Source of the DNA: Stylophora pistillata | Lineage: Eukaryota | Assembly: GCF_002571385.2 (NCBI RefSeq) | Contig: NW_019217932.1 | Span: forward strand, 222,329 to 278,837 | Length of the DNA: 56,509 bases | Reading direction: 5' to 3' | Shown: piece by piece, positions 43,592 to 45,378 of the stretch | Numbering within the stretch: position 1 is the stretch's first letter | How the letters are laid out: each line of letters opens with the position of its first letter | Made by a program: the position numbers and the translations under genes | Notes under the pieces: model-generated | The model's database searches: none | What the model was told of the DNA's origin: nothing | Seen by the model: the letters and a program-made list of their open reading frames with translations, nothing else

Positions 43592-44893
43592 TTAGTTAGA
43601 AGCTAACAAAGATTGCTTTTGCAGCTTTGTTTTATAAACTTCAAGCATCAAGTTTTTCAGGTACTCAATCTCCTTAGATAAAGAATTAACTTGTTCTTTG
43701 AGTTCGCCATTATCCTTCTCAAGCCCAGCAAGTTCTTTAGCCATGACATCTTGCTCCTCACGCTTTTTGACTCGGTAGCGAGTCGCAGCATCTTTATTCT
43801 GCTCCCGCTTTCTTCTCCTTTGCTGTGGAGTTTTGACCTTTGCTGGTTTGTCATTTAGATATGGCTCAAAGTGGTTGACCTTTGCTCGGGTGGTTGTTAC
43901 AGGAGAAATTTGCACAGTCTTCTTGACTGGTGTTTCGGGGGACGATGGACATGAGAAACTCTCTTCACCAGGGGATGCCACTGGGGTTGTAATCTCCAAT
44001 AATTCTGACTCGGGTGACAAAACAGAGGGATGAGAGCCCATGTCAACATCAGGAACACTCTGCAAAGGGGATGTTGGACCAACTTGTTCCTCTGTCTCTA
44101 TCACTGTGTTAACTATGTTCTTGCCACTGGTGAGCAGCTTCCTGAGAATCTCATCTACATTTGCAAAGAGGTTAGTGTTTGAGGATCCTTCTGATATTGA
44201 TGAATCTGTAATTTCTGGAGTGATGACAATTTCTGGCTCAATGGAAACAGATGGTTCTGAAGAAGTGAATTCAAAATCAGCAAGGTTCACCAGGTCACCA
44301 CCATCTACAGAAAGAACTGGCTCTGTATTATGGAACTCAAGTTTCTCTGTCATCCAGTCAGAATCCAACAGACCTCCATTGCCAGCTAAAAGTTAAAAGG
44401 AAACTTTTTGTTAATACTTCATTAAAGCTCTCGAGTGATGAAAACATCTCTATGGCTTTAGACATCAATGATCCCTAATAGAAAATATGCTGAATTTTCT
44501 CTCTGCTGTAAATATCAGAACTGACGCAACATGATGCAATCAAATTCAGTAAACGAGAAACCTCACTCAATATTTATGAATTATTGTTCACAGTTCTGAG
44601 AGGGGAACTTGTAAGAAGTTAGTTTCAGTTTCGTCTTTAAAGAAAACAGCACACATAAACTTCTTCAGTGACCCTATAAGATACCAACCTTCTACATCGA
44701 ATTCCTCAAGCAGGTCTGCCGCCGATAAACTGAGCGGAGACGAGGGCTCGAGTTGATGCTTCAGAGCATCCGTCTCTTCTATGTACACGTCATATTGTTC
44801 AAGAGTTCCGCTTTCCACTAAGATCGGGAGCGAACTGAAGAGCTCCAACTCTTCTAGAGTCTGAGATGTCGAAAATAATGAAATGTCTTCCAT
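43592..44893 (-). CDS. ATF4: bZIP transcription factor ATF4/ATF5, coding exons 44689-44893 and 43592-44385 (alternative in-frame ATG at 44923)
   Basis: DWMTEKLEF motif; bZIP RKREQNKDAATRYRVKKREE..L..N.ELKEQV..L.KEIEYLKNLMLEV; phase-1 GT-AG intron 44386-44688; AACATGG start context. Confidence 0.93.
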
Positions 44894-45316
44894 GTTCTTG
44901 GATTTGTGATATGTTCTGGCCATCTATAATCGATGTAAGAGAGACAACTCGGGCGCGTTGTAGGAAACTGAAAATTGAAAGTCGGAAACCAACGTAAGTA
45001 CACGCACTTCGCACGCCCTCACATTGAAAATTTTACGTTTCAGAAGCGATTTCGCTCAAATTAACCCATTTATTTCACCATATATACGATAAGATACAAC
45101 CTTAAGTTCCTTGGTCGTCTCAAAACAACTTTTTTTAAAAAAAAAAATCGGTTTCGAAGCAAGCTTTCAGTAAACAAAAGAACGAAATATAGCGCTACGT
45201 AGAAGAAAGCGTTGCTCTCGGCGATTTCTTTCATATCGAGAACTCGCCAAATTTTGTGTAACTGTGGGATCGAGAAGATCAGAAGGCATCCTAATAGAAT
45301 GAAGTACTTACTCCAT
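44799..45316 (-). promoter_or_regulatory. ATF4 uORF2 (spliced, 57 codons, overlaps the main ORF out of frame)
   Basis: ACC-ATG-GA|GTAAGT at 45316-45312 joins ttttcAG|TTTCC at 44967 and reads open to TGA at 44799. Confidence 0.75.
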
Positions 45317-45366
45317 GGTTGTACTGGTGCAAATAAATTGCACGGGAAGGTTTTGCCGCAATGCTT

Positions 45367-45378
45367 TCACACCGCCAT
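45367..45378 (-). promoter_or_regulatory. ATF4 uORF1 (Met-Ala-Val-stop)
   Basis: ATG GCG GTG TGA, ending 50 nt upstream of uORF2. Confidence 0.78.

What the first reader, a model, noticed from the sequence alone, without database searches (positions are those of the whole stretch)
44799..45378. Splice-hidden, mammalian-style uORF1/uORF2 translational switch on a probable cnidarian ATF4
Seen: a 3-codon uORF (ATG GCG GTG TGA, 45378-45367). Fifty nt later comes ACCATGGA, followed immediately by a GTAAGT donor. Splicing to the ttttcAG acceptor (44967) gives a 57-codon uORF2 (MDFLQRARVV...QEHGR...KRNS*) that overlaps the main ATG (44893) out of frame by 95 nt. Known: mammalian ATF4 uses a 3-codon uORF1 and a ~59-codon overlapping uORF2 for delayed re-initiation under eIF2-alpha phosphorylation, with the main ATG in the same relative frame (inside CAT-G). 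Inference: the integrated-stress-response switch is conserved to the cnidarian-bilaterian split and may gate coral heat-stress responses. The alternative acceptor (tatAG, 44923) also yields an out-of-frame overlapping uORF (24 codons).
Basis: partly seen in the sequence, partly recalled or inferred. Interest (0 to 1): 0.85.

Follow-up and report, generated by a model that had tools for sequence, protein, structure and literature searches.

The report
Coral ATF4 two-uORF translational switch
The stress transcription factor ATF4 of this coral carries the same two small upstream reading frames, one only visible after splicing, that let mammalian cells switch ATF4 on under stress, and the layout is shared by other corals, sea anemones and a fish; it is an expected but well-documented extension of a known mechanism.

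Summary
A minus-strand, single-copy ATF4/ATF5-type bZIP gene lies at about 45388-43472. Raw RNA-seq reads confirm the predicted 5'-leader intron (45311-44968) with 258 and 242 junction reads.

The spliced leader holds:
- a 3-codon uORF1 (MAV, 45378-45367);
- a 50-nt spacer;
- a 57-codon uORF2 (45316-45312 plus 44967-44799) that overlaps the main ORF in the +1 frame.

The same layout recurs in four other coral lineages, an unnamed third anthozoan clade, Exaiptasia and Nematostella. A loach ATF4 locus also has an MAV uORF1 and a donor 5 nt after the next AUG, but its acceptor is only predicted.

- The main ORF most likely starts at 44923 (conserved MART, weak context), 10 codons before 44893, so the overlap is 125 nt.
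- The alternative acceptor at 44923 has no read support.
- Read 5' ends cluster only 7-10 nt upstream of the uORF1 AUG, and some lie downstream of it.

Stress-dependent delayed reinitiation is inferred from homology and was not tested. The heat-stress link is speculation. I found no paper describing this in Cnidaria. Verdict: a new member of a known kind, of moderate interest.

The parts
45379..45560 (-). Conserved promoter block: CRE palindrome TGACGTCA (45542-45535), two inverted CCAAT boxes TGATTGGTT (45521-45513, 45490-45482), ACGTCA (45475-45470), C/EBP-ATF-type sites ATTGCATCA (45449-45441) and ATTTCATCA within ATTTCATCATCCC (45399-45387)
   Evidence: (alignment A2 with Exaiptasia and Nematostella, 71% mean column identity; ATTTCATCATCCC invariant)
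45312..45388 (-). Exon 1 (5' leader). Apparent 5' ends at 45388, 45384 and 45371; no coverage beyond 45447
   Evidence: tables 2 and 6. RNA-seq ends only, not cap-mapped
45367..45378 (-). uORF1: ATG GCG GTG TGA (MAV*), context G at -3 and G at +4
   Evidence: Three codons in every lineage examined, with the stop varying among TGA, TAA and TAG
45317..45366 (-). 50-nt AUG-free spacer between the uORF1 stop and the uORF2 AUG
   Evidence: 50-57 nt in all cnidarian leaders, 74 in the fish
45312..45316 (-). uORF2 start (ATGGA), last 5 nt of exon 1, context A at -3 and G at +4
44968..45311 (-). Intron 1 (344 nt, GTAAGT...TTTTCAG). If retained, the uORF2 AUG reads ATG GAG TAA
   Evidence: 258 and 242 junction reads, one contig in X9; intron depth about 1% of exon depth
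44799..44967 (-). Exon-2 part of uORF2 (57 codons in all). It overlaps the main ORF by 125 nt from AUG1, or 95 nt from AUG2, in the +1 frame
44921..44923 (-). Main ORF AUG1 (MART...), weak context (T at -3), preceded by a TAG stop
   Evidence: the Ala, Arg and Thr codons vary synonymously across nine leaders
44891..44893 (-). Main ORF AUG2 (MEDI...), strong context (A at -3, G at +4), 30 nt after AUG1
44689..44967 (-). Exon 2
   Evidence: joints; X9 record 12 spans 44689-44967
44386..44688 (-). Intron 2 (303 nt)
   Evidence: 435 and 536 junction reads
43472..44385 (-). Exon 3: rest of the CDS (stop TAA at 43594-43592), bZIP domain at about 43825-43652, 3' UTR with read ends at 43472-43476

Best explanation
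This is the 5' leader of the coral's single ATF4/ATF5-type bZIP gene, and it is built like the ATF4 leader of bilaterians. The mechanism below is inferred from mouse and Drosophila. Ribosomes first translate the 3-codon uORF1 close to the cap, and the 40S subunit stays on the mRNA and resumes scanning. When eIF2 ternary complex is plentiful, the subunit is reloaded within the 50-nt spacer and initiates at the strong-context uORF2 AUG. uORF2 exists as a long ORF only in the spliced mRNA, and it ends 125 nt inside the ATF4 coding region in another frame, so ATF4 is not made. When eIF2-alpha is phosphorylated, reloading is slower. Subunits then pass the uORF2 AUG and initiate 49 nt further on at AUG1 (weak context) or 79 nt further on at AUG2 (strong context), producing ATF4. 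Shown here: the gene identity, the splice, the ORF layout and its conservation across Anthozoa and in a fish. Inferred: that the uORFs are translated and that the leader responds to stress.
For: Gene identity. The exon-3 product has a bZIP domain. Its only solved-structure match is the human ATF4 bZIP, E 1.5e-12. Its relatives include proteins named ATF-4 in Nematostella, Exaiptasia, Actinia, Montipora and fishes. It is single copy in the genome.

Splice. There are 258 and 242 reads across 44967|45312 in two raw RNA runs and a contig in a third. Strand bias fits a minus-strand mRNA.

Layout and conservation:
- uORF1 has exactly 3 codons in all leaders. It reads MAV in this coral, Exaiptasia, Nematostella, two members of a third anthozoan clade and a loach. 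It reads MEV, MEA or MAE in other corals. The stop codon varies (TGA, TAA, TAG) but not its position.
- The spacer is 50-57 nt in cnidarians.
- The uORF2 AUG always has a purine at -3 and G at +4.
- In the genomic or unspliced sequences of this coral, coral L006, Exaiptasia, Nematostella and the fish, a GTAAGT donor follows 5 nt after the uORF2 AUG.
- uORF2 is 40-57 codons in cnidarians and always in the +1 frame, with 71-125 nt of overlap.
- Extra AUGs in the spacer (four leaders) are all in frame with uORF2.

Peptide. The uORF2 peptide is poorly conserved, and its nucleotides change synonymously in the main frame instead. This matches a positional rather than a peptide role.

Machinery and literature. 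eIF2-alpha with the ELSRRRIRS Ser51 site is encoded in the same genome. In mouse and Drosophila the two uORFs have the opposing roles assumed here (PMC2172506; PMC4433282).
Against: No ribosome profiling, reporter or stress experiment bears on this locus.

Read 5' ends cluster at 45388 and 45384, only 7-10 nt before the uORF1 AUG. In run X24, 33 of 157 molecules end at 45371, inside uORF1. AUGs this close to the cap are normally leaky (PMC3177215), and some mRNAs may lack uORF1.

The spacer is 50 nt against 87 nt in mouse. That could allow substantial bypass of uORF2 even without stress.

The vertebrate stem-loop layer in the overlap is not evident: the fold z-score is +0.38.

The fish acceptor is only predicted. 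A second candidate acceptor 32 nt upstream would give a 5-codon ORF instead.
Confidence: 0.8

Rival explanations
1. The uORFs are real but act as a constitutive damper or a leaky-scanning bypass (CHOP/GADD34 style), not as delayed reinitiation. uORF1 would be too close to the cap to be used efficiently, so most ribosomes meet uORF2 first. Regulation, if any, would come from stress-dependent bypass of uORF2.
For: Apparent 5' ends lie 7-10 nt from the uORF1 AUG, and some lie downstream of it. Contigs of three other lineages also stop 7-12 nt before uORF1. Short leaders increase leaky scanning. Mouse reporters with only the overlapping uORF keep some inducibility.
Against: A 3-codon length kept while the stop codon changes identity, strong Kozak-type context in every lineage, and a spacer held at 50-57 nt all argue that uORF1 is translated and that its distance to uORF2 matters. 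The anemone uORF1 contexts match 10-11 of 12 positions of the TISU element, which initiates efficiently 5 nt from a cap.
Confidence: 0.12
2. The ATGGCGG core of 'uORF1' is conserved mainly as a DNA element of the core promoter (a YY1/TISU-type site just downstream of the start site), and its reading frame is incidental.
For: It lies within about 10 nt of the apparent start site. Exaiptasia reads CAAGATGGCGGT and Nematostella CAAAATGGCGGT, against the TISU/YY1 consensus SAASATGGCGGC. It abuts an invariant 13-nt promoter motif.
Against: Several corals have ATGGAGG, ATGGCTG or ATGGCCG, which weaken the YY1 core but keep ATG plus two codons plus a stop. The in-frame stop is retained as TGA, TAA or TAG. 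The fish keeps MAV with different nucleotides (ATGGCAGTG) and lies further from its TATA box. The two roles are not exclusive: TISU acts in both transcription and translation.
Confidence: 0.05
3. Chance arrangement of short ORFs in an AT-rich leader.
For: Loose versions of the layout arise in about 3% of shuffled leaders.
Against: The strict layout arises in 0.3% of shuffles. It recurs with the same spacing, frame and intron position in lineages whose proteins are only 35-50% identical.
Confidence: 0.01

Closest known systems
Mammalian ATF4 leader (3-codon permissive uORF plus ~59-codon overlapping inhibitory uORF; Lu, Harding and Ron 2004, PMC2172506; Vattem and Wek 2004)
   Same: A 3-codon first uORF with Ala as codon 2 (GCG in human per PMC7494916). 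A second uORF of similar length overlapping the start of the coding region out of frame. Several in-frame main AUGs with leaky first starts (PMC11058473). An intron in the 5' leader (PMC8933703).
   Different: The spacer is 50 nt rather than 87. uORF1 is apparently only ~10 nt from the 5' end. There is no start-stop uORF0. No stable stem-loop is predicted in the overlap. Function is untested.
Vertebrate ATF5 leader (paralogue with the same two-uORF design)
   Same: Same design. From general knowledge of vertebrate paralogy, not tested here, the cnidarian gene would be co-orthologous to ATF4 and ATF5.
   Different: Not compared at sequence level here.
Drosophila crc (ATF4) leader (PMC4433282)
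   Same: Two uORFs with opposing tested roles. uORF2 overlaps 125 nt of the coding region in another frame, the same overlap length as here when counted from AUG1.
   Different: The fly was tested with reporters and the coral was not. The fly sequence was not examined here.
Yeast GCN4 / Neurospora cpc-1 leaders
   Same: Delayed reinitiation after a short 5' uORF, controlled by eIF2-alpha phosphorylation.
   Different: Four non-overlapping uORFs in GCN4, much longer spacers, and no splice-dependent uORF.
[quoted passage not shown]
   Same: An ATGGCGG core, located within about 10 nt of the apparent transcript start. The anemone versions match 10-11 of 12 positions.
   Different: TISU normally starts the main ORF of housekeeping genes, whereas here it would start a 3-codon uORF. 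This coral matches only 7 of 12 positions.

Membership tests
ATF4/ATF5-type bZIP transcription factor | C-terminal bZIP domain | tested here: met
   Pfam bZIP_1 E 3.8e-11 and bZIP_2 E 3.1e-8 on the exon-3 product
ATF4/ATF5-type bZIP transcription factor | Basic region and zipper closest to ATF4 rather than to other bZIP classes | tested here: met
   The only solved-structure match is human ATF4 (1ci6_A), E 1.5e-12, sharing the NK-AATRYR-KKR core. Named relatives are ATF-4 of Nematostella, Exaiptasia, Actinia, Montipora and fishes. The tree groups it with corals, next to anemones.
ATF4-type delayed-reinitiation leader | Short 5'-proximal uORF (3 codons) ending well upstream of the next AUG | tested here: met
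   45378-45367 reads MAV*. The length is conserved in all leaders.
ATF4-type delayed-reinitiation leader | Last uORF overlaps the main start codon out of frame | tested here: met
   57 codons after splicing, +1 frame, 125 nt overlap from AUG1
ATF4-type delayed-reinitiation leader | Both uORF start codons are present in the mature mRNA | tested here: inconclusive
   uORF2: yes, about 500 junction reads. uORF1: reads cover it (depth 16-32 at 45381), but 5' ends cluster at 45388, 45384 and 45371, so a share of mRNAs may start inside it. No cap mapping was available.
ATF4-type delayed-reinitiation leader | uORF1 promotes and uORF2 blocks main-ORF translation; induction on eIF2-alpha phosphorylation | not testable with these tools
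   Needs reporters or ribosome profiling. The only supporting fact is that eIF2-alpha with the Ser51 motif is encoded in the genome.
ATF4-type delayed-reinitiation leader | Common descent with the bilaterian leader rather than convergence | tested here: inconclusive
   A loach ATF4 locus has an MAV uORF1 and ATGGC|GTAAGT, the same donor position as in the anemones. Its acceptor is only predicted, and only one vertebrate was examined.
TISU element | Match to SAASATGGCGGC within about +5 to +30 of the start site | tested here: inconclusive
   The window matches 7 of 12 positions, Exaiptasia 11 of 12 and Nematostella 10 of 12. The position is inferred from RNA-seq ends only.

The most novel reading that the evidence does not exclude
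The intron that splits uORF2 five nucleotides after its AUG is as old as the cnidarian-bilaterian ancestor and is itself part of the control. In every genomic or unspliced copy seen here (this coral, coral L006, two anemones, a fish) the unspliced form reads ATG-GNG-TAA. Intron retention would therefore turn the inhibitory overlapping uORF into a 2-codon mini-uORF. In the spliced form an exon-junction complex would sit in the spacer just ahead of the uORF2 AUG. Together with a cap-proximal, TISU-like uORF1, this would make the ancestral ATF4 switch depend on splicing and on scanning-free initiation, two layers not in the textbook model.
Probability: 0.15. Interest if true: 0.75.

Novelty: new member of a known kind. 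Interest (0 to 1): 0.5.

Why it matters
It documents, with transcript evidence, that the ATF4 translational switch architecture predates the split between cnidarians and bilaterians. It also shows which features have been held constant for that long: the three-codon length of uORF1, a spacer of about 50 nt, the +1-frame overlap and the intron position. The uORF2 peptide has not been held constant.

For coral biology it offers a concrete, compact leader of about 200 nt. That leader could be used as a reporter of eIF2-alpha signalling in Nematostella or Exaiptasia, and so as a test of whether the integrated stress response is engaged in heat stress and bleaching.

For translation research, the very short cap-to-uORF1 distance and the splice-dependent uORF2 are natural variants that can test the delayed-reinitiation model.

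Tried and rejected
- **Alternative acceptor at 44923.** No junction reads at a 5% reporting threshold. The AG there is part of the TAG stop in front of AUG1.
- **Upstream ATGs at 45410 and 45406.** They lie beyond the main read ends and are absent from the anemones and from corals L006 and L008. I treat them as promoter sequence.
- **RNA structure.** Exon 1 folds at -22.4 kcal/mol (z -1.29) and the overlap region has z +0.38. Nothing resembles the vertebrate stem-loop.
- **Pfam on the exon-2 peptide.** No family.
- **Literature.** No paper holds ATF4, uORF and Nematostella together. The hits for 'coral' were irrelevant, for example a supplier's town. PMC509193 is not held.
- **CARE core motif.** It is not enriched in the window as a whole: 17 found against 15 expected. 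Only the local cluster and its conservation are notable.
- **Possible variant turning the uORF1 stop into TGG in run X24.** It is suggested only by the last letters of a 13-read loose-end consensus. I regard it as unsupported; it could equally be non-templated addition at a 5' end.
- **Joined spliced model.** It was not submitted to any search. Homology and domain searches used exon 3 and exon 2 by reference. uORF2 was read as 5 nt of exon 1 plus the exon-2 piece, and only the split codon was formed in a script.

Full report
**The locus**

Reading the minus strand gives a three-exon gene.
- Exon 1 runs from about 45388 to 45312 and is all leader.
- Intron 1 is 45311-44968 (GTAAGT...TTTTCAG).
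- Exon 2 is 44967-44689.
- Intron 2 is 44688-44386.
- Exon 3 runs from 44385 to about 43472, with the stop TAA at 43594-43592.

The exon-3 product has a bZIP domain. Its only match among solved structures is the human ATF4 bZIP (1ci6_A, E 1.5e-12), with which it shares the NK-AATRYR-KKR basic core. Its database relatives include proteins named ATF-4 in Nematostella, Exaiptasia, Actinia, Montipora and fishes. The gene is single copy in the 398-Mb assembly.

In a tree the protein sits among scleractinian corals. Next to them lie the sea anemones and a third, unnamed anthozoan clade, and the fishes lie on the far side.

**Transcript evidence**

Two raw stranded RNA runs of the same species label, and contigs of two older runs, were laid on 43200-46400.
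- The joint 44967|45312 is carried by 250+8 reads in X23 and 229+13 reads in X24, and by a high-depth contig in X9.
- The joint 44385|44689 is carried by 435 reads in X23 and 536 in X24.
- Depth inside intron 1 is 1-3, against roughly 170-450 in exon 2, so retention is about 1% in these samples.
- No read uses the alternative acceptor proposed at 44923.
- Coverage stops within 45340-45446 and is zero beyond 45447.
- Read ends cluster at 45388 (10 of 14 molecules in X23), 45384 (11 of 32 in X24) and 45371 (33 of 157 in X24).

The apparent 5' end is therefore only 7-10 nt upstream of the uORF1 AUG, and some molecules may begin inside uORF1. These are RNA-seq ends, not mapped caps.

Contigs of three other lineages also stop 7-12 nt before uORF1. 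One coral contig (L008) runs 39 nt further upstream.

**The observation**

uORF1 (45378-45367) translates to MAV-stop. The 50-nt spacer has no AUG. The uORF2 AUG (45316) has A at -3 and G at +4 and is followed after 5 nt by the donor. The exon-2 piece, read from 44966, stays open for 55 codons to the TGA at 44801-44799. That gives 57 codons in all, in the +1 frame of the main ORF.

I did not submit a joined spliced sequence to any search. Searches were done exon by exon by reference, and only the split codon was formed in a script.

**The main start**

An in-frame AUG at 44923, directly after a TAG stop, lies 10 codons upstream of the AUG at 44893. Across nine leaders the first residues are MART (MAQT in L010). 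The codons vary synonymously: Ala is GCC, GCT, GCA or GCG; Arg is AGA, CGG, CGT or CGA; Thr is ACA, ACG or ACT. The same nucleotides read in the uORF2 frame change the amino acid.

Selection therefore acts on the main frame from AUG1 onward. Counted from AUG1 the protein is about 342 residues, against 332 from AUG2, and the overlap with uORF2 is 125 nt.

AUG1 has a pyrimidine at -3 in all nine leaders. AUG2, 27-30 nt later, has a purine at -3 in the five leaders where its context was printed. Leaky, multiple in-frame starts are also described for human ATF4 (PMC11058473).

**Conservation of the leader**

Natural spliced transcripts and genomic loci of relatives were fetched and analysed.

- *uORF1.* It has exactly three codons everywhere. 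It reads MAV in this coral, Exaiptasia, Nematostella and two members of the third anthozoan clade. It reads MEV, MAE and MEA in three other coral lineages. The stop is TGA, TAA or TAG but never moves, and the context is always a purine at -3 with G at +4.
- *Spacer.* It is 50, 50, 51, 51, 52, 52, 53 and 57 nt in the cnidarian leaders.
- *uORF2.* Its AUG context is always strong. uORF2 is 57 codons in four corals and Exaiptasia, 52 in the third clade and 40 in Nematostella. It is always in the +1 frame and overlaps the main ORF by 71-125 nt.
- *Distance to AUG1.* The uORF2 AUG lies 49-52 nt before AUG1.
- *Intron position.* In the genomic or unspliced sequences of this coral, coral L006, Exaiptasia and Nematostella, the donor GTAAGT follows 5 nt after the uORF2 AUG.
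- *Extra AUGs.* Those in the spacer (Nematostella, L008, L009, L015) are all in frame with uORF2.
- *Peptide.* The part of uORF2 upstream of AUG1 is poorly conserved between corals and anemones. Two alleles of this species already differ at four uORF2 residues without gaining a stop.

In the exon-1 alignment the two ATGGs and the T that begins the uORF1 stop are among 14 invariant columns, against 48% mean column identity.

In shuffles of a related leader the strict layout arises in 0.3%.

**Comparison with bilaterians**

A loach (Triplophysa rosa) ATF4 locus has ATG GCA GTG TAG, again MAV. After a 74-nt spacer comes ATGGC|GTAAGT, the same donor position as in the anemones. With the nearer of two candidate acceptors this gives a 48-codon uORF in the +1 frame, overlapping the start by 74 nt. 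That acceptor is not verified, and the other candidate would give a 5-codon ORF.

An unidentified ATF-4 transcript from a JGI metatranscriptome, which groups with the fishes and other non-cnidarian sequences, has two 3-codon uORFs, a 51-nt spacer and a 58-codon +1-frame overlapping uORF.

The literature supplies the functional model.
- In mouse, uORF1 has three codons and promotes reinitiation, uORF2 extends into the coding region and represses, and the spacer is 87 nt (PMC2172506).
- In Drosophila the two uORFs have the same opposing roles, and uORF2 overlaps 125 nt of the coding region (PMC4433282).
- In human the 3-codon uORF has GCG as its second codon (PMC7494916).
- The human leader also contains an intron whose retention gives a separate mRNA variant (PMC8933703).

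**Mechanism**

The best-supported reading is the delayed-reinitiation switch set out under the best explanation.

The target of the stress kinases is present: eIF2-alpha with ELSRRRIRS is encoded on another contig.

Every functional step is inferred by homology.

The main weaknesses are these.
- The cap-proximal position of uORF1 would normally make an AUG leaky (PMC3177215).
- The spacer is short.
- The 5' ends are heterogeneous.

A possible answer to the first weakness is that the uORF1 context resembles the TISU element (SAASATGGCGGC), which initiates faithfully 5 nt from a cap. Exaiptasia matches 11 of 12 positions, Nematostella 10 and this coral 7. This is a lead, not a finding.

No unusual RNA structure is predicted in exon 1 or in the overlap.

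**Novelty**

The general statement that ATF4 genes 'throughout phyla' carry an overlapping uORF is already in the literature. Conservation is described in detail only for vertebrates. No paper in the searchable library combines ATF4, uORF and Nematostella, and the coral hits were irrelevant.

The finding is therefore a well-supported new member of a known kind. The added details are the identical tripeptide, the fixed spacer, the conserved intron position and the near-cap uORF1.

The scan had not reported this leader before. An earlier first-stage note on the same stretch concerns the C/EBP-ATF sites.

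Noticed in passing
window 45379-45560 (minus strand); L016 5405-5590; L018 5345-5526; L006 440-575: The ATF4 promoter is conserved at nucleotide level between this coral, another coral and two sea anemones. It holds two inverted CCAAT boxes about 30 nt apart, a CRE-like site, TTGCATCAG, and an invariant ATTTCATCATCCC directly 5' of uORF1. 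The last two contain C/EBP-ATF composite cores (TGATGCAA, TGATGAAA), which suggests ATF4 autoregulation. Two more cores lie in intron 2 (44436, 44532). The motif is not enriched in the window overall (17 found, 15 expected).
   Followed up: partly
window 44921-44923 and 44891-44893: Conserved pair of in-frame main start codons: a weak-context AUG1 (MART) and a strong-context AUG2 (MEDI) 27-30 nt later, in all anthozoan leaders examined. This could give two N-terminal isoforms, or a wider capture zone for reinitiating ribosomes.
   Followed up: partly
window 45311-45316; L006 647-660; L016 and L018 at the uORF2 AUG; L019 about 2700: In the unspliced form the uORF2 AUG reads ATG-GNG-TAA in this coral, coral L006, both anemones and the fish. 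Intron retention would therefore replace the long inhibitory uORF by a 2-codon one. Retention is about 1% in the runs examined.
   Followed up: partly
window 45351 and 45381: Run X24 carries a 1-nt deletion in the A-run of the spacer (171 of 214 reads), making the spacer 49 nt, and a G-to-A change at 45381 just upstream of uORF1 (31 of 32 reads). Neither touches a uORF start or stop.
   Followed up: no
window 41816-42607 (minus strand); L016 7564-8316: A Steroid_dh (3-oxo-5-alpha-steroid 4-dehydrogenase-like) gene lies directly downstream of ATF4 on the same strand, as in Exaiptasia. This is conserved microsynteny.
   Followed up: partly
window 45770-46260: Upstream of the promoter lie an inverted repeat (about 45770-45860) and a short ORF with a MADF DNA-binding domain match (46011-46256, plus strand, E 6e-9). 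This is probably a transposon remnant, and low-level reads on both strands occur here.
   Followed up: no
L020 1-330: An unidentified ATF-4 transcript from a JGI metatranscriptome has two consecutive 3-codon uORFs (MSL, MEG) before a 58-codon overlapping uORF. This is reminiscent of the extra start-stop uORF in human.
   Followed up: no
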